Of a DNA stretch of 64,000 nucleotides, positions 22,701 to 58,471 are shown piece by piece. The notes beneath the pieces are model-generated. The model saw nothing but the letters and a program-made list of their open reading frames with translations, was not told the origin of the DNA and ran no database searches. Source of the stretch: Guillardia theta CCMP2712 (lineage: Eukaryota > Protista > Cryptophyta); the NCBI RefSeq assembly GCF_000315625.1, contig NW_005434668.1, forward strand, positions 1,096,981 to 1,160,980, in the 5' to 3' direction. Position 1 is the first letter of the stretch. Every line of letters starts with the position of its first letter. The translations under genes and the position numbers were made by a program.

Positions 22701-22960
22701 GGCATGCTATTGATTGTGTCCGCATGACGGAGCCAACAGTCGCGAGCAGCGGGAGGAGGAGGAGCGAGGTGGAGAGCGCGTATGGTCAAGATGAAGTGAG
22801 AATGGCGTGGTAACTTGGACGGTAGAGGACAGAAGCGGGTGCAGCGAGTACAAGGAGACATGGGAAAAGGTTCCCGCACTAGATCGCAACCCTGAATTGC
22901 AGTATCCAATGGTTGACCTGGTGTTGTTTTGATGTGATCATCGGAATGATTCGGAACAGT

Positions 22961-25689
22961 ATGATGGCAACAGTGATCGTAAAACTCAAGTGTCTGATAT
23001 CCCTCTCCTTGGTCGGTTCAGCACGGCTCCCACTTACATCATCGCTGACCACTTCGCCTATAAGGAATCTACTTCTTCGTGGAGGGTCAGAGTCGCCAGG
23101 TGAGTGTGTATGATGCTGAACTATCACTGAGTCAGTGTTGATGTAGGTACAAAATTGGATTGTCACGTCAAGCTGTCCCTGCCTCTGCAAGATTCTCTCA
23201 AGGAAGTGAAGGTCGTGGGGTCATGGGATGGTTGGAAGGCCCGTCACCCGCTGCAGCGGAATGAGGACGCGTTTGAAGCTTCTCTCAGCTTGCCAGAAGG
23301 GTTGTATGAGTTCAAGTTCATCATGGATGGAAGGTGGACAACGAACGATGGGTGGCCGCTATCCAAAGATGGGCATGGAAATGCCAACAATGTCCTCAAC
23401 GTGACGATGCCGGAGGTCAAGATAGAAGAGGTTCAGGCTGCGGAAGAGGTTCAGAATACCAACGTCTGCAAGGCTCCTAGGAGACTGAGGTGACATGTCT
23501 CACTTGTTGAGTACAATGCTCATGGCGATCAAGGTGTGGGCTGTTTGCTTGGGAGAGCCTGCATACAGTAGCAGCTGGCGGGGTTGCCCCGCACGTAACG
23601 GAGTTAGCAGCGGGGCTGGTAAGAGCGAAGGGTGTAGTCACAGTTGTAGCTGATGGCGTAATATGACAGGAAAGAAGAGGACATGAAGTTCATCTTTTCG
23701 TCCGAGCTGGTTTCTCAAGTTTTGTTGGATGACTTCATGTAATACGCCAAACTCTTCAGCTCCAGGTCAAGACCCATACGCTTGTGTGCATGGGGTGCAT
23801 TTGGTATGAATCGCTGAGAATGATGTGAAACGGATGGTGACGTTCGATTCCGACAGCATCGCATCCCGTACGGAAAGCATGGGGATATCGTGAAGGATTG
23901 CGACGTCATGTGTGAGCAGGCGAGACGAGCATGTGAAGATCTTTTTGTTCTGACTTCGTCGCTCCCTTCCAGTTCTTTTGGCTGTGCCAGTGGCTGGAAT
24001 CTTTTCAAGTATATCTACGGGCAATAGCACACTTTTGTTCTGACTTGCTCGTCAGAAAGATTTTCACTTTGACATACTACACGCCCATGACTGGCTAGCT
24101 GCCAAGGTATGTCGCAAAGGGTATCATCCGCACTGATGTCCTTGACAGGTTATCGTCGCAGCCAAACAGTGAAAGAGAAGATTATATACGTTCATGATCT
24201 GATATCTGACTCAGATTCCCGGGAAGGAGGCACAGAGCTGTTGTGACGATGCATTCGACTGAATGGGGACGATGTGGGCAGAAGGTATATACCTGTACAT
24301 ACAAACACGTTCTGAGCTCCCACAGTATGCAAGATGGAAATGTGAAGGGCAGTCAGGCCTTATCAGAGAGATAGAACGTGCTGCCTGCGAGGCGGCCGAC
24401 AGGTTTCACTCGCTGAAGTTGACGTGCCTGACTGCTGTCGCAAAGAGTCATCTGTGTGTCCGGAGTGCTAGAGGAGGAAGTAAGGATGTTGTACGATGTC
24501 CCAGGTCAGTGTGATCTTGCTCCGCCTCGTGATCGTGAGAGGTGGACAAGCGTACAAGACACGTACGATCTACAATGCGATCCATGTCCGTCAGTACGAG
24601 TGTGTTCAGGTGGACCCTGGACAGGTCTCAAACCTCCTGGGACTTTCTGTCGATGACTTCCAAGCAGATCAAGCGGCAGATAGGATTTGACTGGTACAAC
24701 CCGATGATTCTCTTCGTGGGACGTATGGTAGAACAGAAGGTCAGTTGGCTCCTGACTCGCTTGTTCTCCGACCAATTGGACCTTACAGGGTCCTGATATC
24801 TTGCTCGACGCCGTGCCGCAGATCTTAGCAAACAACTCGGAAGCTCGGGTGATTTCATCGTACACATGCCCTTCACAGTCAAACACATCCCTTACGAATC
24901 TGCATCTCCTCCTCATCTCCTTCAGCTCTTAAAAAGGTGTCGCAGATCGTCTTCATCGGAAACGGCCACATGCTCCCTGACATGAAGGAGCGAGCGATTG
25001 TGAGTGATCCTGCCGTCCTCACGGGAGTTGACGCGCCTCTCCAGGCCCTCGGTGTGTCGCATGCCGTGCGTTTCCTTGGGTCAGCATCAGGAGATCCGCT
25101 CAAGATGTACGAGAAAGCCTGCGATGTCCTGGTGTGAACTTGTGGGGGTCAAGTGCAATATATCATGACCTTTCAGGTGGTTCCCAGTCGGAATGAGCCG
25201 TTCGGCATCGTCGTCTTGGAGGGATGGGCTTGCCACAAGGTGATCCGCCTGCTGCTTGCTCGACCCTTCCCCTCCCCTCCCTCCATCGCCCTCGAGTATG
25301 TTCCTGTTCAAGGCCCTCCCTCCCTCCCTCCCTCCCTCCCTCCCTCCCTCCCTCCCTCCCTCCCCTCTCCGTGTGTTTCATTCACTCGTGTCTTGAAGCC
25401 TGTTGTTGCTACCACGTCGGGTGGACCACGGGAGTTCCTGTGCTCTGAGAGGTGAAGGAGGAAGCCGGTAGAAGGTTTTCTGCTGACGATGGTGAACAAC
25501 CAACGTAGGGAGGGTATCCTGAGTGATCCCGTCGCCGAGAACGTGAGCGCAAGCGTCACGAAACTCCTGTCCAACTGGACGAAGTTGCAGGAGATGGGGG
25601 AGAACGGATTCAGGAAGTGTGCAGAACACTTCAACTGGGACTCCATTGCACAACAAACAGAAGAAGTGTACTATGCAGCTGTAGGGTGA
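22961..25689 (+). CDS. CBM48 (AMPK-beta-type glycogen/starch-binding) plus GT4 glycosyltransferase with bipartite presequence
   Basis: MMATVIVKLKCLISLSLVGSA..LLLRGG, then VKVVGSWDGW..YEFKFIMDGRW..DGHGNANN (CBM48), then GT4 motifs LFAWESLHTVAAGGVAPHVTELA, DILHAHDWL, TMHSTEWGR, ILFVGRMVEQK-GPDILLDA, VPSRNEPFGIVVLEGW, FNWDSIAQQT. Extra 5' exons from 22782 are possible. Confidence 0.9.
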
Positions 25690-36672: not shown

Positions 36673-37787
36673 ATGGCCAGCATGAGATTTGTGCTGTTGT
36701 TCCTCATGCTTATTTCTATCTCCGATGCCTTCATCGGCCATGGCTTCGCTGGCGTCAACCTTCCCCTGCAGAGGAAAGCTTACAGTGCGCACAAATCCCG
36801 CGGGCCCATCGTGAAATGCAACCCCGAGGACTCTCCCGTCATCTCAGAGAATTTTGACAGCATGTTTCGCAAGGACGGCACCACTTGGGGGTCAAAGTCG
36901 TATCCTGTCTCGACCGTCGAAGAGCCCGAGCCTCTGGACATCGTCACCAAGTCCATAGCACAAGCGCTCGTTACAGTGCTCAAAGGCTCGCTCGATTGGT
37001 ATTACCACAAGAAATCTGACTTTGCGCGTTTCTTCGTGCTGGAGACGGTCGCCAGGGTTCCATACTTCGCCTACATGTCTGTTTTGCACCTCTACGAGAG
37101 TTTCGGGTACCACGACAGGGCTCACTGGATCAAGATTCACTACGCAGAGGCTGACAACGAGTAAGACCTTCACTTATACACTATGATACAACAAACATGT
37201 GTGACGATGCTTCTTCTCAGGCTTCACCACCTGCTCATCATGGAGGCGCTGGGAGGGAACAAGGAGTTCTCAGATCGCTGGATCGCTCAGCATGCCGCGT
37301 TCGCCTACTACTGGTTCTGCGTCACCTTCTACTTCCTCCATCCCCGTGGCGCCTACTACGTCATGTCCCTGATCGAGAACCATGCGTACCATACCTACTC
37401 CAAGTGAGCCTCCTCCCTTACTCCTCCTCCTTCCGTACTCCTCCTCCTCCTCCTCCCTCCTCGTACTTGAATCTCTCTCTCTTGCTCTGCCCCTGTCTCC
37501 TCCCCTTCAGTCTCTTCTGCCTTCCCATCGGCTCTCCTTGACTCCCTTCCAGGTACATCGAGGCCAACAAGAGCTGGTTGGCGTCCCAGCCATCGCCAGC
37601 CATTGCCAAGGAGTACTACGAGGGCGGCGACCTGTACCTCTTCGACGCCTTTCACACGACGAGGGCGGAGGAGCAGGAGCGCAGGCCCCGCGTCCAGAGC
37701 CTCCTCGACACATTCGAGAGCATCCGAGACGACGAAAGTCAGCATCATCGGACCATGCTCTCCCTGGTCGAGCGAGGCCGCCCGTAG
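36673..37787 (+). CDS. PTOX: Plastid terminal oxidase (AOX/PTOX di-iron family), stroma-targeted
   Basis: Signal peptide MRFVLLFLMLISISDA|F (ASAFAP-like). RFFVLETVARVPYFAYMSVLHLYE, EADNE-LHHLLIMEALGG, ENHAYHTY, LYLFDAF and IRDDESQH. Confidence 0.95.
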
Positions 37788-50900: not shown

Positions 50901-51117
50901 TCTTCATCAGGAACTTTTGAGAGGCCCCGAAAAGAGCTGGTAGGTTTGGAGGAGAAGTACGAACTATTGACGGTATAGGAACTTGTTTTTGTAAACCAAA
51001 CCCTCTCTAACTAAACCTAAACTAATCCTGTTGTTCGATAGAGTAGTGGGGCCATGGCGGTGGAACGGACGCAATGGCTACCAGTCGGAGTGTAACGACA
51101 AACAGAAGACGAGAACA

Positions 51118-54100
51118 ATGCAACTTGGAGGAGAAGAAGAAACAAATGACACTGACCGTTGTGTCCCCAAAAGAAGAGTGGGAATAACGTCGATTTTATC
51201 CTTCCTAGCACTTGTTTTGGCCTCTTGCGAAGCATCGTGGACCTCAAATACGCCTGTTGCCCTTGCTTCGAGAGGATCAAGCAGTTTAAGCTTGAGACTT
51301 CGAGGAGGAGCTGAAGGACAAAAAGAAAAACTTTCAGACAAGGAGGATCCTGTTTTTGAGGCCAGTTCAAAGTCAAGCTTTGCCAAGAGAGATAAGCTCC
51401 TGGAACTACAGAAGGAAGCACAAGCAAGATGGAAACGCGAGAAGGCACGCGATCTTGATTCTTTTGTTCATCTTATAGATGATATTGCTTTTAGGTGTTT
51501 GAAGCAGATTCACCTGATCAGAAAGACATCCAAAAATTCTTCGTAACATTTCCGTAATGCATATATGCAACACTTCCCGGCTTCGCTAACTACATGGATT
51601 GTAGATATCCGTACATGAATGGGCTCTTGCACTTGGGACATGCCTTTTCATTGTGAGATCGATTCTCTCTCAACTTTTTGCAACGTTGTTTGGTGGGAAT
51701 GATTCCGAGTTCTTTAGAACGAAAGCGGAGTTCGCAGTAGGATATTACAGATTGAAAGGTTTTCTCTGCCTTTGGCCATTTGGCTTTCATTGTACAGGTT
51801 TGTCATCTCCCCTCATGGATTTGATCATCAAAGATATGGGCAGCAATAACATCGTAAAAACAGGAATGCCCATCCAAGCTGCTGCAAATCTACTGAAACA
51901 GGAACTGGGAGAAAGCGGTGGGCATTAAACCTCGTTTCACAAGAGATGCACGATTGTCATGCTCGGATATCTGCAGGTTGTCAATCGGATCTGGCTTCGG
52001 TTGGAAAGCAAAATACTTCGACGAGTGCAGGTTGAAAACGGATTTGATCTTTTGAAAGTTCTGAATTCTATTTGACGCAGGGAAATCAAAGAGTCAGCGT
52101 CAGGTTCAACCCCCGTGTATTTATGCTCGGCCACTCAGAAGTAGCCCCAGGTTTTGTTGAGCATGGGGATCCCAGAGGAACAAATTTCACTGTTTACAAA
52201 TGCGTCTCATTGGTTGGAATACTTTCCTCCAAAGGTGAAGGTGGCAGGAAAAGAAATGAGCGGAGCTGAGATATGACAGGCCAAAAGAGATTTACAAGAG
52301 ATGGGTCTCAAGATAGATTGGCGAAGATCATTCATTACGACTGAGGTTTGATTTCTAGCATCTGCATAAGTGCTTGCTGCAGTACCTGCCTGACTAGATA
52401 TCAGGCTTCTCCGTGGTACGACGCTTTCATCAAATGGCAATTCAGAAGGCTTCAGGTCTGCGAACCTGAGCTATCATTTCGTCCAACTTTCTCGTCCTCT
52501 CCTGAGATTTGAAATGCAGTCTCTGGACAAGATCAAATTTGGAAAGAGACATTCAATCTATTCGCCTTTGGACAAGCAGATCTGCGCAGATCATGATCGA
52601 GCGGTCGGGGAGGGAGTCTGTCCGCAATCTTATACGCTGATCAAGATGAAAGTAAGTTTCTTTTGAATGACGTAACACTTGCGGTGACATTGTACAAAAC
52701 AAGTTGTTGGACACATCCAACAAAGTGTTTGAGAACATCTCTTCCTACGACATATACCTGCTTGCCGCAACCTTGAGACCAGAAACAATTTATGCACAGA
52801 CAAACTGTTGGGTCCTTCCACATGACAAAGATGGTAACGACGTGACATACGGGTGCTATCGCTCGCATGTTGCCAACGAGCTGTTCATTGTCGGCGATCA
52901 TGCGGCTCGCAACATGGCGTTCCAGGGTTTGAGTCCCTCCTTTGGCGTCTCTGAATGCGTCGCAAGAATCCGAGGACAGGACCTCCTAGGGCTGAGAGTT
53001 GCTTCTCCCATCAGCCGTTTGGGAGAGCTTCGCATTTTTCCTCTCCTCAACATCTTCATGGACAAGGGGACAGGAATCGTAGCTTGTGTTCCTTCCGTTT
53101 CTCCCGAGGACCACATCGCCCTGCGTGACCTCGAGGCGAAGCCTAAATTTCGTGCCAAGTATGGGATCGAGGATAGCTGGATGGAGGGGCTGCGATCGGA
53201 CACTGTCATCATGGCCCCGTACAAGAAGGATAAGGGGGGAGACAAGGAGGAGGAGGAGGAGAAGTGCGAGTGCATTGCTGAGCGAGCGTGTGAGGAATTC
53301 AAAGTTGCATCGCAGAACGACAGGAATTCACTTGAAATGGCCAAAATCAAAGCATACAAGATCAGTCTCAACGACGGCTCAATGACAGCCGGTCCCTTCG
53401 CTGGTCAACGAGTGAAAGATGTGAAAAATCTGATCAGAGATCAATTCATTGCAGAGAATTTGGCGTATGATTTCTCGGAACCAGAATCAAAGGTGAGGAT
53501 GAGGCGATGGTTGATCTGTGTGACATGATGGAGAAAATATATGATAATGACGACCAAGACAGCAATGACGACCAAATTGAGAAGTAGGAAGAAGAGGAAG
53601 AAGAGAGAGGATGGAAATGACGATGGCGATGATAATGATGATGACGATGGTGTTGACGATAATGATGAAGATGACGATGACGATGATCAGGTGATCTCGA
53701 GGACTGGAGATACGTGTGTCGTGGCTCTTACCGACCAGTGGTATTTGAACTACGGCGAAAAGAAATGGAAGGCGCAGGCAAGTAGATTGGAGAAGTTTCT
53801 TCACTTCTACAACTCCTTTCCTTCCTTCCCTCCTCCTCCTCCTCCTTTCCCTCCACCCCCCTCCCCCCTCTCCATCCCCCCTTGCCGATCCCTCGTCGCT
53901 GCTGTCTCCTTCTCCCCTTACACGTCTTCCCACCTGCTCACCTGCTCACCTGCTCCTTCGCTTCTGCTCAACATTCCACTCATCCTTCCTTCCTCATCAT
54001 CTCAAACCCACTGGCACAGGTGGAGCAGCACATCAGACAGGAGATGGAATTCTTCAGCTCAGACACCAGAGGACGCTTCCTCTCCGCCATCGACTGGCTG

Positions 54101-57100
54101 GAGGACTGGGGCTGCTCGCGCTCCTTTGGACTGGGAACGAAACTGCCGTGGGACGAGACTCAGGTCATCGAGTCGCTCTCCGACTCGTCCATCTACATGT
54201 CATTCTACGCCATTGCGCACCTGGTCTCGTCGTCCTCCCTCCTCAATGATGGCGATGAGGGTGCAAGCGCAGGAGCTGGAGCAGGAGGCAAGGTTGATAT
54301 AGACCCTCACCTGGTCCCTGACGAGGAGTGGGATTACATCTTCCTGGATGCTCGCATGCCGGACCAGACTGTCATCCCGCAGGAACGGCTGAAGATGATG
54401 AGGACAGAGTTCAGATTCTGGTACCCGGTCGACCTAAGGGTGTCGGGCAAGGACTTGATTCAGAACCACCTTCTCTTCTTCCTCTACAACCACATCGCTA
54501 TCTTCCCGCCTGAGCGCTGGCCGAGGGCTGTTCGCACCAACGGGCATGTCATGCTCAACAATGACAAGATGTCAAAGTCCACGGGCAACTTCCTGACGCT
54601 GCGCGAGGCTGTCGACCTTTACTCGGCTGACGGGATGAGATTTGCCCTCGCCTGTGCAGGAGATGCAAACGAAGATGCGAACTTCGAGCATTCAGTTGCC
54701 AACTCCGCTATCTTGAAGCTCACGTAATGATGCGCTACATCAGTTCGTTCTCGTCTTGATGACAGCGTTCACCCTCCCTCCCTCCCTCCCTCCCTCCCTC
54801 CCTCCCTCTCACTTGCCTTCCTCCCCTTCCCTCCCTCCCCTTCCCTCCCTCCCTCCCTCTCCCTCCCTCCCTCCCTCTTTCCCTCCCTCCCTTCTCCTAC
54901 TTTCCCTCCCTCTTTCCCTCCTGTTCATTCTTCCTACTTGGCCCCCTGAGTTTTTTGGCAGGAATGCGTTGAGATTTTTTGAGACTTCAGTTGCGCTGCT
55001 AAAGGTGAGCCAAGAATTCCATGTCTTGACCATCACATCACAGCACACCACATCACATCACATCACATCACATCACATCACATCACATCACATCACATCA
55101 CATCACATCACATCACATCTTCTTCCGTTTGTTTCCGTTCCCTTCGTCTGCTGCTTCTCAGCTCTCTTCCCTCTGCCCTCGTTTCGACCCATCTCAACTC
55201 ACCTGATCTCACCAACTTCGTCAGGGAGAGAGCGGAGAGAAAGATTACACAATTCGCGATGAACCAGAAAGTCTCCACCTTGCCGATCGCATTTTCAGCA
55301 ACGAGCTAGCAAGGTCTGCGAACATGATTGTTCATCTTTCACCTGAGTATGAACTTGTCAGGTACGCACGGATGGCAGACAACCACTATGCAAAGCAACA
55401 GTTTCGAGATGCTCTGATCTGCGGCTTTGACCTTCTGCTAGGCGCAAGAGACAGGTCAAACTCATCGCGCCCCTCGTTACTTGTGATGTCAACCCGTACA
55501 GGTATCGCAACATGGTGCGAGCCATGCACGATGGCGGCTATCTGAAAGATCTCCTCCTCCGCTTCCTTCAGTACCACACCGTCCTCATCGCCCCCATTTG
55601 TCCGCATTACGCTGAGCACGTCTGGTCGATGCTCGGTGTGAAGCAGAGCTTGTAATGGGAGGTGACTGAGATGGCAGGAAACGCGGATAGTGTGATGCAT
55701 GCAAGATGGCCTGAAGTCAAAGAAGAAGATGCAGGTGCGGGGAGCAAGTTGGGTTGTCGTCAGATGCCTTAGGTCGAGGTGACATGGGCTGGGAAATCTG
55801 TGAATGTGCTATGATTTCGACGAGTGAGATGAGCTGAGAAGTGTCTTTTTGTGTTATTTTGTTGACCAGTGCCATGTCGTCATGTTGACATTTGACATGT
55901 CTATCAGCACTTACCAGAATGACCAACTACATCGACAAGCTCGTCGTTGAGCTAAGTGAGACTGTACGACCGCGCCAGCAGCTGGTTGACTGGGATCATG
56001 TCAGGGTTGCAAGTGGAGAAGATGAGCAAGAAGCAGAAGGTTGAAGCCGTGGAGATTTTCATCTCTACCTCCTGCTCCCCCTGGCAGGTCACTTGCTTAG
56101 AGGTAACCTCCTCCTCCTCCTCCTCCTCCTCCTCCTCCTCCTCCTCCTCCTCCTCCTCCTCCTCCTCCTCCTCCTCTCCCTTTCAAGTTGTCGATTATGG
56201 TGTCCTTGTTCACTCAAGACCCCTCTGCTGATACACTTGTATTGTGATATTCTGTGATGTACTTGTATGGTGATATCCTGATGTAGGTATATTGTGATAT
56301 TCTGATGTAGCTGTGTTGTGATATCCTGAGTTACTTGTATGGTGATATCCTGATGTACGTGTATGGTGATATTCTGATGTACTTGTATTGTGATATCCTG
56401 ATGTAGATATATTGTGATATCCTGGTGAAGATGTATTGTGATATCTTGGTGAAGATATATTGTGATATCCTGATGTAGATATATTGTGATATCCTGATGT
56501 AGATATATTGTGATATCTTGGTGAAGATGTATTGTGATGTATTCCGACATCCTTGTAACATGCATCTCAGATTCTTCGTAATCACTTAAAGGATGGGAAA
56601 TCGTTCGACAAAGAATTCAAGAAAAGCCTGCTGAAACACCCTGACTTGCACAATCTGAGCAAGGCCGAGGTCCTCCTCCCTCCTTCTCCTCCCTACTCCT
56701 TCTCCTCCATCCTCCATCTCCTCCCTCCTCCCTCCTCCTTCTCCTCCCTTCTCCTTCTCCTCCCTTCTCTTCTAGTTACACTTCCTGCTGTTCCTCTCCC
56801 CTGACGCCGTTACCCCTTGCAGACGAAAAAAGTCTTGCCTTTCGTGCAGTTCCGCATCGACGAGTTTGAGCAGAGGGGGGAAGAGGTAAGAAATTCTTCC
56901 CCTCCTCCTCAAGGGATTGACTTTGCCTGCAGGCCTTCGAGGACGGGGTTCCCTTTGAGGAGGAGGCAGTTGTGCAGGAACTGACCTCCTTCCTCCTATC
57001 GGAACTTCCGCTCTCCTCTGTCAAGGTGTGCGACTCCTCCTAACTCTCCTTCTCCCTCCCCTTGCCTGTCTTTACTTTTCCCCTCCTCCTCGTCCCTTCT

Positions 57101-57333
57101 CCTCGCTCTGCGCGCCTGCGTCCGCCATCCACGACCTTGCTTTTATCCTCCTTTCCCCCTCCCGTTCCCTTCCGTCTTCTTCCCTTCTTTCCTGTTCTTC
57201 CCTCCTCTTCCTCCCCCTCCTCTGCTCCTCTCGATGTCCGTGAACGAGGAAGCAGGTCGTGAGATGGCAGGAAGAGCATCAGCAGCTGGTTGAGCGACCG
57301 CTGCCTGGAACTCCTTCCTTCCACTTCTCGTGA
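51118..57333 (+). CDS. LARS: Leucyl-tRNA synthetase, eukaryotic cytosolic type, with bipartite presequence
   Basis: [23 protein letters not shown] (HIGH motif), [34 protein letters not shown] (CP1), [30 protein letters not shown] and [10 protein letters not shown]-terminal hydrophobic [14 protein letters not shown] followed by LRLRGG. Confidence 0.97.
55033..55098. repeat. (CACAT)n microsatellite in a LeuRS intron
   Basis: Direct pentanucleotide repeat. Confidence 0.9.
56234..56545. repeat. 24-bp minisatellite (about ATTGTGATATCCTGATGTAGATAT), roughly 12-13 copies, in a LeuRS intron
   Basis: Tandem copies visible directly. The antisense translation repeats HQDITIYL. Confidence 0.92.
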
Positions 57334-57496
57334 GTTCTTGAGGAAATGGAGACTAGGACGAGGAAGAAGAGGTGGGGGAAAGAGGGGGAAGAGGAAGAAG
57401 AGGCGGAGGGGGGAGAGTAAGAAGAGGGAGAAGGGGGGCGGGGGGGGGGGGGGGGGCCTCCCGTGTAGATATGAAAAGACAATTTCAAGTAAAAAT

Positions 57497-58471
57497 ATCA
57501 ACCACGTCTCTCCTTGACACCCTCCACTGTCACAAAGAACCTCCTCCTCCTCCTCCTCCTCCTCCTCCTCCTCCTCCACCACCACCACCACCACCTCTAC
57601 CCACTCTACGCTCCTTCCTCTATCGTTCTCTTCTGTCATCCTGCCTCCTCCACCCTTGATCCTCCTCCCCTAGTTCTCGTCGTCCTCGTTGTCGGATACC
57701 GCACATGCGTCTGCTCCCTTCGCCTGCTGCCTCTTGCAGTAGTCCAGCAAATGATTCCTGTCCACCTCCCGCAAGCCCTCCGCCACTTGCTCAGCAAAAT
57801 CCATGCCCTGATTCAGCAGTCAGCTCCTCCTCCACTACCACCACTTCTCGTCCTCCTCCCCCTCCCCCTCCCCCTCCTCCTCCTCCTTCTCCTCTCATTC
57901 TTCCCATGAACTCCTTTCCCATCCGCCTCCTTCCTCCTCCCCCTCTCTCGCTCTGACCTCGTACAGTCGGAGCAGGTGGATGATGGCGCGTTGGGAGTTA
58001 GCGGCGACCTGACTGTCCTTGTCGCGCAGGGAGGCGAAGACGGGACCAGAGGCAAACTGAAACATCTCCATGCCGAGTCGATCGATTTGCTGCAATCGAC
58101 TTAGAGGCTGGAGGAGGAGGAGGAGGAGGAGGAGGAGGAGGAGGAGGCGGGGGGGGAGGGGGATTGGAGGGATGTCTTGATGGAGGAGGATTTGGGAGGT
58201 TGTGCGGGGGGAGGGGGGTAAAAAGGAAAGAGGGGGGAGACTTACGACAATCCTGCAGGCAAGTTTGAGCTCCACCAGCGCCTGTGCCTTCACTTCCGGG
58301 CTGCTGTCGCTCACAAGCTGCACCAGCCAGCGCCAGAGCTGCTGCTCGACCACCTGCTGCTCCGCATGCGAGAGGAGGAAGCGAAGAGCTCCTCCGATCA
58401 CCTGCCAGGCATGAGCGCCAGACAGAATAAGGACCAGCAAGGGCAGAAGGACTGGGAGAAGGAGGATGAAG

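What the first reader, a model, noticed from the sequence alone, without database searches (positions are those of the whole stretch)
51118..51330. Ubiquitin-C-terminus mimic (LRLRGG) ends the LeuRS presequence: candidate deubiquitinase-cleaved periplastid targeting signal
Seen: between a signal-like hydrophobic stretch ([14 protein letters not shown]), a short Ser-rich segment and the conserved LeuRS body lies LRLRGG (51292-51309). Known: this is identical to the last six residues of ubiquitin, deubiquitinases cut after LRGG, and import across the second membrane of red complex plastids uses SELMA, an ERAD-derived ubiquitin-dependent machinery. Seen: an unrelated gene in this window (CBM48-GT4) has LLLRGG at the equivalent position, while the stroma-type PTOX presequence (A|F) has none. 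Inference: periplastid-compartment (PPC) cargo may carry a ubiquitin-tail mimic that a PPC deubiquitinase uses as the processing site, or that acts as a sorting tag. RGG-like motifs in such presequences may already have been noted, but I cannot confirm that any mechanism has been described.
Basis: partly seen in the sequence, partly recalled or inferred. Interest (0 to 1): 0.85.

Follow-up and report, generated by a model that had tools for sequence, protein, structure and literature searches.

The report
Ubiquitin-tail motif ends periplastid import leader
In the cryptophyte alga Guillardia theta, the leucyl-tRNA synthetase sent to the remnant cytoplasm around the plastid has an import leader ending in LRLRGG, ubiquitin's last six residues. 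The same ending recurs on many unrelated leaders and is kept in related algae, so it is probably the undescribed site where the leader is cut off.

Summary
Observation confirmed. LRLRGG lies at 51292-51309, in frame with ATG 51118, after a signal-peptide-like stretch and a 19-residue Ser-rich spacer. Spliced RNA contigs from three studies join this exon to the LeuRS body.

The genome is Guillardia theta CCMP2712, a cryptophyte, not a diatom. Its periplastid compartment (PPC) translates nucleomorph mRNAs, so a PPC LeuRS is expected.

The motif is not chance:
- Of 44 LRLRGG-coding sites sampled genome-wide, 25 lie 29-109 residues after an in-frame ATG plus hydrophobic stretch. The null is 1.8-3.4% (p about 1e-25).
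- All four distinct leader-bearing LeuRS relatives keep [L/M]RLRGG, while the rest of the leader cannot be aligned.
- In a PPC-type eEF1A, the residue after LRLRGG aligns with eEF1A residue 2.
- None of 21 light-harvesting (stroma-type) loci, nor PTOX in this window, has it.
- It is not universal: the PPC Nar1 leader lacks it.

Best reading: a leader-end processing site cut after GG by a PPC protease with ubiquitin-C-terminus specificity. Neither cleavage nor the enzyme was shown. I could not identify a candidate, and ptDUP is reported absent from cryptophytes.

No searchable paper mentions it. This scan has already noted the same motif many times on other DNA of this genome.

The parts
51062..51117 (+). 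5' untranslated region of the LeuRS mRNA. RNA contigs start at 51062, 51073 and 51086. It holds an out-of-frame upstream ATG at 51074.
51118..51234 (+). Start codon and signal-peptide-like part of the leader: n-region [22 protein letters not shown], then hydrophobic [17 protein letters not shown]. The likely cleavage CEA|S was read by eye.
   Evidence: Hydrophobicity heuristic only; no SignalP was available.
51235..51291 (+). Transit-peptide-like spacer [19 protein letters not shown]. It is Ser/Thr-rich and has no acidic residue.
   Evidence: The same composition is seen in 31 leaders.
51292..51309 (+). LRLRGG, identical to ubiquitin residues 71-76. Proposed leader-end processing site, cut after GG.
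51310..51444 (+). Rest of exon 1. It holds a poorly conserved acidic stretch ([21 protein letters not shown]) and the conserved LeuRS N-terminus [24 protein letters not shown].
51445..51494 (+). Intron 1, a GC-AG type after shifting the reported joint by 2 bases.
51495..57514 (+). Remaining exons and introns of the eukaryote-type leucyl-tRNA synthetase (GUITHDRAFT_157023). The public model lacks the leader and starts at MNGLLHLGH.
22946..23100 (+). Exon 1 of the CBM48 gene: signal-like stretch, Ser/Thr-rich spacer, LLLRGG (23069-23086), SESP, then a GT donor at 23101. This is the second instance in the window.
   Evidence: RNA support was not tested.
36676..36780 (+). PTOX leader of the stroma type (..ISISDA|FIGHGF..) without any RGG. 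It serves as the contrast case in the window.

Best explanation
The stretch encodes the bipartite import leader of the Guillardia theta LeuRS that works in the periplastid compartment (PPC).

Proposed route:
1. The signal peptide takes the precursor into the ER lumen around the plastid (inferred).
2. The Ser/Thr-rich, slightly basic spacer acts as the transit-peptide-like part for passage through SELMA across the periplastid membrane (inferred from the known pathway).
3. LRLRGG marks the end of the leader. It is the site where a PPC-resident protease that recognises ubiquitin's C-terminus cuts after Gly-Gly and releases the mature enzyme starting at AEGQK (inferred).

The enzyme is most likely one that also matures ubiquitin or NEDD8 precursors, or removes ubiquitin after SELMA transport. 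That would make it a UCH-, USP- or other DUB-type cysteine protease.

What is shown: the motif exists in the mRNA, recurs genome-wide behind signal-like N-termini, is conserved in relatives, sits exactly at the mature N-terminus in eEF1A, and is absent from stroma-type leaders.
For: 1. Gene model. Spliced contigs of three runs join the leader exon to the LeuRS exons.

2. Genome-wide association. A DNA pattern for [L/F][R/S][L/F][R/S]GG gives 353 hits against 255 for the backwards control. I read the first 60 listed places. Of the 44 true LRLRGG sites, 25 lie 29-109 residues (median 47) after an in-frame ATG followed by a hydrophobic stretch. The null is 1.8% of all open six-frame positions, or 3.4% in long ORFs (binomial p 1e-32 and 1e-25). 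None of the 60 is ubiquitin itself.

3. Only the hexapeptide is fixed. The spacers are Ser-rich with net charge +1.4, and the 20 residues after GG have net charge -0.9. Codons differ between copies.

4. Junction. In L017, LRLRGG is followed by [20 protein letters not shown], which aligns from residue 2 of eEF1A. The Pfam GTP_EFTU match begins at profile position 1. In L029 the junction LRLRGG|M matches only the polyubiquitin repeat junction in the PDB.

5. Conservation. P0002, P0083, P0151 and P0152 (about 60% identical in the enzyme body) all have a signal-like N-terminus plus [L/M]RLRGG at the same place. The rest of the leader cannot be aligned. No other protein among the 271 LeuRS-related sequences retrieved has it. 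These four form one clade with the window gene (SH-aLRT 99).

6. Destination contrast. None of 21 LHC loci has RGG in the frame upstream of the domain, and their leaders end in (S/R/K)-M-Q. PTOX has none.

7. Published PPC proteins (PMC6105332). The Nbp35 locus has a signal-like exon and ..GFIRLRGG|SS. The Grx/Dre2 locus has a signal-like stretch plus LCLRGG.

8. Functions behind the motif fit the PPC or nucleomorph: eEF1A, SAP domain, weak Rad54_N, weak CBM20, CBM48.
Against: - There is no direct evidence of cleavage. No N-terminal proteomics for PPC proteins was found.
- For LeuRS itself, 25-45 poorly conserved residues separate GG from the conserved body, so the junction is not pinned for this gene.
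- From general knowledge, UCH and USP enzymes mostly grip the folded ubiquitin body, and short LRGG peptides are poor substrates. Here only 19 residues precede the motif, and Pfam finds no ubiquitin domain.
- ptDUP is reported absent from cryptophytes (PMC12412216).
- Of three UCH loci, two start without a leader and one is unresolved.
- The motif is not universal. The PPC-localised Nar1 appears to go from the signal peptide straight into the mature protein.
- The signal-peptide calls rest on a hydrophobicity rule and reading by eye, not on a trained predictor.
Confidence: 0.55

Rival explanations
1. The leader is cut at LRLRGG, but by a protease unrelated to deubiquitinases, for example a PPC metallo- or serine peptidase that evolved this specificity. 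The likeness to ubiquitin's tail would then be convergent or incidental.
For: The junction and conservation data say nothing about the enzyme class. No leader-bearing DUB was found. ptDUP is absent from cryptophytes (PMC12412216). Stromal leaders here end in a different short motif, (S/R/K)-M-Q, so short end-motifs read by dedicated peptidases seem usual in this alga.
Against: The match covers the full six residues of ubiquitin (eight with one mismatch in LeuRS: LSLRLRGG against LVLRLRGG), more than a minimal protease site needs. The PPC has a ubiquitin system (SELMA), so enzymes with exactly this specificity should already be there.
Confidence: 0.2
2. LRLRGG is a sorting, retention or handover signal that is not itself the cleavage site. 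For example, it could bind a ubiquitin-tail-recognising SELMA/Cdc48 cofactor, or stop onward transport into the stroma.
For: The motif is specific to non-aromatic (PPC-type) leaders and absent from LHC and PTOX leaders. SELMA is ubiquitin-dependent.
Against: It lies at the far end of the leader, directly against residue 2 of eEF1A. Leaving it attached would add a foreign N-terminal extension to a conserved protein. Artificial transit peptides without it reach the PPC in Phaeodactylum (PMC3017844). The PPC Nar1 lacks it. It is therefore not needed for translocation or retention as such.
Confidence: 0.15
3. The motif is a relic. The leaders descend from one ancestral leader exon (perhaps part of a ubiquitin fusion gene) spread by duplication or exon shuffling, and the hexapeptide has no present function.
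For: Many unrelated genes share the same hexapeptide. One tandem pair (L056/L057) is a clear recent duplicate.
Against: Outside the six residues the leaders share nothing, and codons differ. In the LeuRS relatives the motif is kept while the flanks have diverged beyond alignment. That is the signature of selection on the motif, not of recent common descent.
Confidence: 0.04
4. Chance occurrence of a six-residue word in this one gene.
For: A single hexapeptide is expected about once per proteome by composition (own estimate).
Against: 25 of 44 sampled sites sit behind signal-like starts against 2-3% expected. The motif is conserved in the four distinct relatives that have their N-termini.
Confidence: 0.01

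Closest known systems
Bipartite targeting sequence (signal peptide + transit-peptide-like part) of PPC proteins in cryptophytes and diatoms, with the rule 'non-aromatic residue at +1 = PPC' (Gould et al. 2006 and Gruber et al. 2007, as cited in PMC4494062 and PMC6105332)
   Same: A signal-like hydrophobic start, a hydroxylated and slightly basic spacer, and a non-aromatic residue after the likely signal cleavage site. G. theta leuRS3 is listed as PPC-targeted in PMC4494062.
   Different: The papers I could search name no conserved motif at the end of the leader and no processing site or peptidase for PPC residents. Here the leader ends in a fixed hexapeptide.
Ubiquitin, polyubiquitin and NEDD8 precursor processing by UCH/USP-type deubiquitinases, which cut after ..LRLRGG or ..LRGG
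   Same: The six residues before the proposed cut are identical. The LRLRGG|M junction of L029 matches the polyubiquitin repeat junction.
   Different: No ubiquitin fold precedes the motif: there are only 19 residues between the signal peptide and the motif, and Pfam finds nothing. Whether a DUB accepts such a substrate is untested.
[quoted passage not shown]
   Same: It provides a ubiquitin system and a need for ubiquitin-tail-specific proteases in the compartment these leaders enter.
   Different: In SELMA, ubiquitin is thought to be attached to lysines of the transit peptide and later removed. A genetically encoded ubiquitin tail inside the leader is not part of the model. ptDUP has no cryptophyte member (PMC12412216).
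Stromal processing peptidase sites of plastid transit peptides
   Same: A leader-end site that defines the mature N-terminus after import.
   Different: G. theta stroma/thylakoid leaders (LHC) end in (S/R/K)-M-Q, not LRGG. That implies a different enzyme in a different compartment.
Viral papain-like proteases and other LXGG-specific proteases (from general knowledge)
   Same: They cut polyproteins after LXGG without needing a ubiquitin fold, which shows that a bare LRGG tail can serve as a protease site.
   Different: They are unrelated in origin, and no such enzyme was sought or found here.

Membership tests
PPC-type bipartite targeting sequence | N-terminal signal peptide | tested here: inconclusive
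   A hydrophobic 17-residue stretch lies 22 residues after the first in-frame ATG. Only a Kyte-Doolittle rule was applied; no trained predictor was available.
PPC-type bipartite targeting sequence | Non-aromatic, non-Leu residue at +1 of the transit-peptide-like part | tested here: inconclusive
   The likely cleavage CEA|S gives Ser at +1 (Trp at +2). The site was chosen by eye with the -3/-1 rule. By the same reading, none of about 22 other LRLRGG leaders has F/Y/W at +1 (three have Leu), whereas LHC and PTOX have A|F.
PPC-type bipartite targeting sequence | Hydroxylated, net non-negative transit-peptide-like spacer | tested here: met
   [19 protein letters not shown] has 8 Ser/Thr, 1 Arg and no acidic residue. 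The mean spacer charge over 29 leaders is +1.4.
PPC-type bipartite targeting sequence | Localisation of the protein in the PPC | not testable with these tools
   This needs GFP fusion or immunolocalisation. Indirect support: a second, leaderless-type paralog exists for the host cytosol, and PMC4494062 lists a PPC leuRS3.
Ubiquitin / ubiquitin-like protein | Beta-grasp fold of about 70 residues preceding the LRGG tail | tested here: not met
   Only 19 residues separate the hydrophobic stretch from the motif, and Pfam finds no domain in exon 1. It is a tail mimic, not a ubiquitin-like domain.
Deubiquitinase substrate | Hydrolysis of the bond after Gly-Gly by a DUB | not testable with these tools
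   There is only positional evidence: eEF1A residue 2 follows GG.
Eukaryote/archaeal-type leucyl-tRNA synthetase (class Ia) | Class I catalytic core and the family's conserved N-terminal and editing regions | tested here: met
   Pfam tRNA-synt_1, _1g and _1e match the 53882-54727 exon. The 52704-53528 exon is 98% identical to a cluster containing GUITHDRAFT_157023, 'leucine--tRNA ligase'. Exon 2 reads ..KFFVTFP, followed by YPYMNG.

The most novel reading that the evidence does not exclude
Cryptophytes remove the import leader of PPC and nucleomorph proteins with a ubiquitin-C-terminal hydrolase-type enzyme. The leader is a genetically encoded 'ubiquitin tail', and the SELMA-associated ubiquitin system doubles as the presequence peptidase of a whole compartment. 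This would be a mode of organelle presequence removal not known from mitochondria, primary plastids or the ER.
Probability: 0.4. Interest if true: 0.9.

Novelty: new variant of a known kind. Interest (0 to 1): 0.8.

Why it matters
How PPC-resident proteins lose their transit-peptide-like leader, and which enzyme does it, is an open point in models of import into red-derived complex plastids.

- **A testable site.** A fixed, conserved hexapeptide at the leader's end gives a precise site to test by N-terminomics and point mutants, and a bait for finding the enzyme (LRGG-based activity probes).
- **A prediction aid.** It offers a simple sequence mark for separating PPC/nucleomorph cargo from stromal and secretory proteins in cryptophyte genomes, where prediction now rests on one residue at an uncertain signal-peptide cleavage site.
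- **Better gene models.** The public model of this LeuRS lacks its leader, and the GenBank 'PPC-targeted' label sits on the other paralog.
- **A new mechanism, if a deubiquitinase is the enzyme.** That would tie presequence removal to the ERAD-derived, ubiquitin-dependent translocon.

Tried and rejected
- **Chance:** rejected.
- **Remnant ubiquitin domain:** rejected. There is no room for one and no Pfam hit.
- **Alternative downstream start giving a cytosolic isoform from this gene:** exon 1 has no second in-frame Met.
- **Oomycete RxLR or Plasmodium PEXEL-type motif:** the residue order does not fit (own reading).
- **Protease candidates:**
  - The UCH family (PF01088) gave three loci. Two have plain starts and one has an unresolved first exon.
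No candidate protease emerged.
- **Literature:**
  - 'LRGG' with 'periplastid', 'LRGG' with 'Guillardia', and 'LRLRGG' with 'signal peptide' and 'plastid' each gave 0 papers.
  - ASAFind 2.0, Gile 2015, Grosche 2018 and the 2025 SELMA phylogeny contain no 'RGG'.
  - Gould et al. 2006 is not held, and Gile's supplements are not held.
- **Raw RNA reads (X13):** almost nothing was laid (1 read), so the 5' end rests on contig ends only.
- Exons were searched one by one by reference, and full-length relatives were reached through database proteins.
- **Diatom PPC leaders:** not checked.
Full report
**What is there**

Window 51292-51309 encodes L-R-L-R-G-G in frame with ATG 51118. Exon 1 reads:
- [22 protein letters not shown] (n-region)
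- [17 protein letters not shown] (hydrophobic stretch)
- [19 protein letters not shown] (spacer)
- LRLRGG (motif)
- [45 protein letters not shown]

The last 20 or so residues are the conserved N-terminus of eukaryote-type leucyl-tRNA synthetases. The frame is closed upstream of 51031, and the exon holds no other in-frame Met.

Contigs of three sequencing runs from three studies begin at 51062, 51073 and 51086. They run through the leader and are spliced from about 51444 to 51495 (a GC-AG intron once the ambiguous joint is shifted by 2 bases), then through ten more introns into the enzyme body. The tool labels these runs 'RNA?' as a guess, but spliced contigs can only come from RNA. The leader is therefore part of the mature mRNA. 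The raw-read RNA run gave almost nothing, so the true 5' end is not fixed. An out-of-frame upstream ATG at 51074 lies within two of the three contigs.

I did not build or search a joined spliced protein. Exons were searched singly by reference.

**Which organism and which gene**

The assembly has 87,145,349 bases in 669 contigs. The 52704-53528 exon is 98% identical to a cluster that contains GUITHDRAFT_157023 of Guillardia theta CCMP2712, on a contig of 1,222,117 bases.

This is a cryptophyte, not a diatom. Its periplastid compartment (PPC) keeps a nucleomorph and 80S translation, so it needs its own cytosolic-type aminoacyl-tRNA synthetases. PMC4494062 lists a PPC leuRS3 for this species.

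The public model of the window gene (918 residues) starts at MNGLLHLGH and lacks the leader. A second eukaryote-type paralog lies on contig C83.

**Is the motif more than chance?**

A whole-genome DNA pattern for [L/F][R/S][L/F][R/S]GG gives 353 matches, against 255 for the same pattern read backwards. I fetched the first 60 listed places (contigs C1-C14, taken in list order and not chosen by content) and read the frame of each.

- Of the 44 that are true LRLRGG, 25 lie 29-109 residues (median 47) downstream of an in-frame ATG followed within about 40 residues by an 11-residue window of mean Kyte-Doolittle hydropathy of at least 2.2.
- The same rule is met by 1.8% of all open six-frame positions of the window, and by 3.4% of positions in open segments of at least 100 residues.
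- The binomial p values are 1e-32 and 1e-25.
- None of the 60 places is a ubiquitin gene.

Scaling 29 of 60 to 353 suggests roughly 170 genes with the strict pattern. This is a rough figure, and shorter x-LRGG forms such as the LLLRGG of the CBM48 gene come on top.

Across 31 leaders only the six motif positions are fixed. The spacer is Ser-rich with net charge +1.4, and the 20 residues after GG have net charge -0.9. Codons differ between copies.

**Where the motif sits relative to the mature protein**

- In L017 the leader MKCVAVLFLMGLATT...PSM-LRLRGG is followed by [25 protein letters not shown]. This aligns with eEF1A structures from residue 2 onward, and the Pfam GTP_EFTU match begins at profile position 1. 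The hexapeptide therefore takes the place of the initiator Met.
- In L029 the junction is LRLRGG|MKLFTHNLL. Its only PDB matches are the repeat junctions of polyubiquitin, LRLRGG|MQIF. From memory, MKLLTHNLL is the N-terminus of TRMT112; I did not test this.
- For LeuRS the junction is looser. Between 25 and 45 poorly conserved residues lie between GG and the conserved PKSFARRD block.

**Conservation**

A search of 1.84 billion representatives with the editing-domain exon, followed by a search with the N-terminal region of the best full N-terminus, found four distinct leader-bearing relatives: P0002, P0083, P0151 and P0152. They come from environmental or transcriptome assemblies and are unnamed.

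- They are about 60% identical to the window gene in the enzyme body.
- Each has a hydrophobic N-terminus and then MRLRGG or LRLRGG, 35-45 residues before PKSFARRD.
- In the alignment the RLRGG block lines up in all five sequences, while the rest of the leaders cannot be aligned.
- Among all 271 LeuRS-related proteins retrieved, no other has this feature.
- In a quick maximum-likelihood tree the window gene and these proteins form one clade (SH-aLRT 99). Its sister (100) holds the C83 paralog and P0154, which starts MADEGAAGTEPKSFARRD without a leader.

The motif has thus been kept through a divergence that erased the rest of the leader.

**Specificity for the destination**

- All 21 light-harvesting-protein loci that I could read lack RGG in the open frame upstream of the domain. 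Where the leader is visible it shows ASA|F-type signal cleavage and ends in (S/R/K)-M-Q.
- PTOX in this window is ..ISISDA|FIGHGF.. without RGG.
- Read by eye, none of about 22 other LRLRGG leaders has an aromatic residue after the likely signal cleavage site; three have Leu.
- Domains found behind the motif fit a remnant cytoplasm and nucleus: eEF1A, SAP, LisH, a methyltransferase, weak Rad54_N, weak CBM20, and CBM48 in this window. Starch is made in the cryptophyte PPC (PMC4494062).

Of the PPC iron-sulfur assembly factors whose leaders were localised by GFP in PMC6105332:

| Locus | Leader |
|---|---|
| Nbp35 (C39) | Signal-like exon, then ..GFIRLRGG\|SS after an apparent intron |
| Grx/Dre2 (C8) | Signal-like stretch plus LCLRGG |
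| Second Dre2 locus (C16) | No motif |
| Nar1 (C33) | Appears to splice from the signal peptide straight into the mature protein, with no LRGG |

The motif is therefore common but not obligatory.

**Mechanism**

The best reading is that LRLRGG is the leader-end processing site of PPC and nucleomorph cargo, cut after Gly-Gly inside the PPC. The most economical candidate is a protease already needed there for ubiquitin or NEDD8 precursor maturation, or for removing ubiquitin after SELMA transport.

Shown: presence in the mRNA, recurrence, conservation, junction position and destination contrast. Inferred: the cleavage itself and the enzyme class.

Points against the deubiquitinase part:
- No ubiquitin fold precedes the tail.
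- ptDUP has no cryptophyte member. The authors themselves call its absence surprising and propose an alternative enzyme (PMC12412216).
- I could not find a leader-bearing UCH, and I could not read the USP genes.

A pure sorting-tag role is less likely:
- Artificial transit peptides without the motif reach the diatom PPC (PMC3017844).
- Nar1 lacks the motif.
- Leaving the leader attached would add an extension to the N-terminus of eEF1A.

**Novelty**

Full-text searches for LRGG or LRLRGG together with periplastid, Guillardia or plastid terms found nothing. The key papers on PPC targeting that I could read contain no 'RGG'. Subscription papers, including Gould et al. 2006, could not be read, so prior description cannot be excluded.

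Within this scan the same motif has been noted many times on other windows of this genome (63 notes). My tests here were made independently of those notes.

Noticed in passing
G000:C83 (L109 5429-5900; L002): The GenBank protein named 'leucyl-tRNA synthetase, PPC-targeted [Guillardia theta]' (P0224) lies on contig C83, not on the window gene. Its modelled N-terminus MLLLLLFLPLPLPLLLF... skips a conserved exon, SFARRDKLIEIQKQ, that has a splice acceptor just upstream. Its closest relative P0154 has no leader. The PPC label probably belongs to the window gene, and C83 is probably the host-cytosol enzyme.
   Followed up: partly
L063-L086 (21 LHC loci of G000): Leaders of light-harvesting proteins end in a recurrent (S/R/K)-M-Q just before the mature protein (..GPSMQ, ..LRMQS, ..GMKMQ). 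This is a candidate stromal processing-site motif, distinct from LRGG.
   Followed up: no
window 51445-51494: Intron 1 of the LeuRS gene is GC-AG rather than GT-AG once the ambiguous joint is shifted by 2 bases. The other ten introns seen are GT-AG and 45-66 bases long.
   Followed up: no
window 51074-51187: An out-of-frame upstream ATG opens a 37-codon upstream ORF that overlaps the main start codon. It lies inside two of the three RNA contigs.
   Followed up: no
window 51118-51653; protein P0270: The public gene model GUITHDRAFT_157023 (918 aa) starts at MNGLLHLGH. It misses about 150 N-terminal residues, including the whole leader.
   Followed up: partly
L096 935-1110 (G000:C33): The Nar1 gene seems to splice from the signal peptide (MVKMLRRPSQLLLVAVLFAAIERTCEG) directly into the conserved N-terminus (IRFTDGDLNDF). 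There is no spacer and no LRGG, which is an unusually short PPC leader if the published localisation refers to this gene.
   Followed up: partly
protein P0153: A protein labelled 'MAG: class I tRNA ligase family protein, partial [Promethearchaeia archaeon]' is a fragment of the leader-bearing, cryptophyte-like LeuRS and begins exactly at RGGQGSPP. It is likely a eukaryotic contig mis-binned into an archaeal MAG.
   Followed up: no
tree: The leader-bearing LeuRS clade is sister to the leaderless cryptophyte LeuRS clade, not to the red alga Hildenbrandia. The PPC enzyme may be a retargeted duplicate of the host gene rather than of endosymbiont origin (quick tree, 30 rows).
   Followed up: partly
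L056 and L057 (G000:C13:130769 and 133887, minus strand): Two copies 3 kb apart share ..VPAR-LRLRGG-GHHEFTISSDEQHFASAVRYANQRSGNAAG. One has a signal-like start in frame and the other has none visible, which suggests a recent tandem duplication of a leader-bearing gene.
   Followed up: no
L094 (G000:C8:983600-984300, minus strand): A signal-like stretch plus an LCLRGG leader is followed by a glutaredoxin-like stretch (VVYIYGTPEEP..), about 670 bases upstream of a Dre2 (CIAPIN1) domain on the same strand. This is either a Grx-Dre2 fusion or two adjacent PPC iron-sulfur assembly genes.
   Followed up: no
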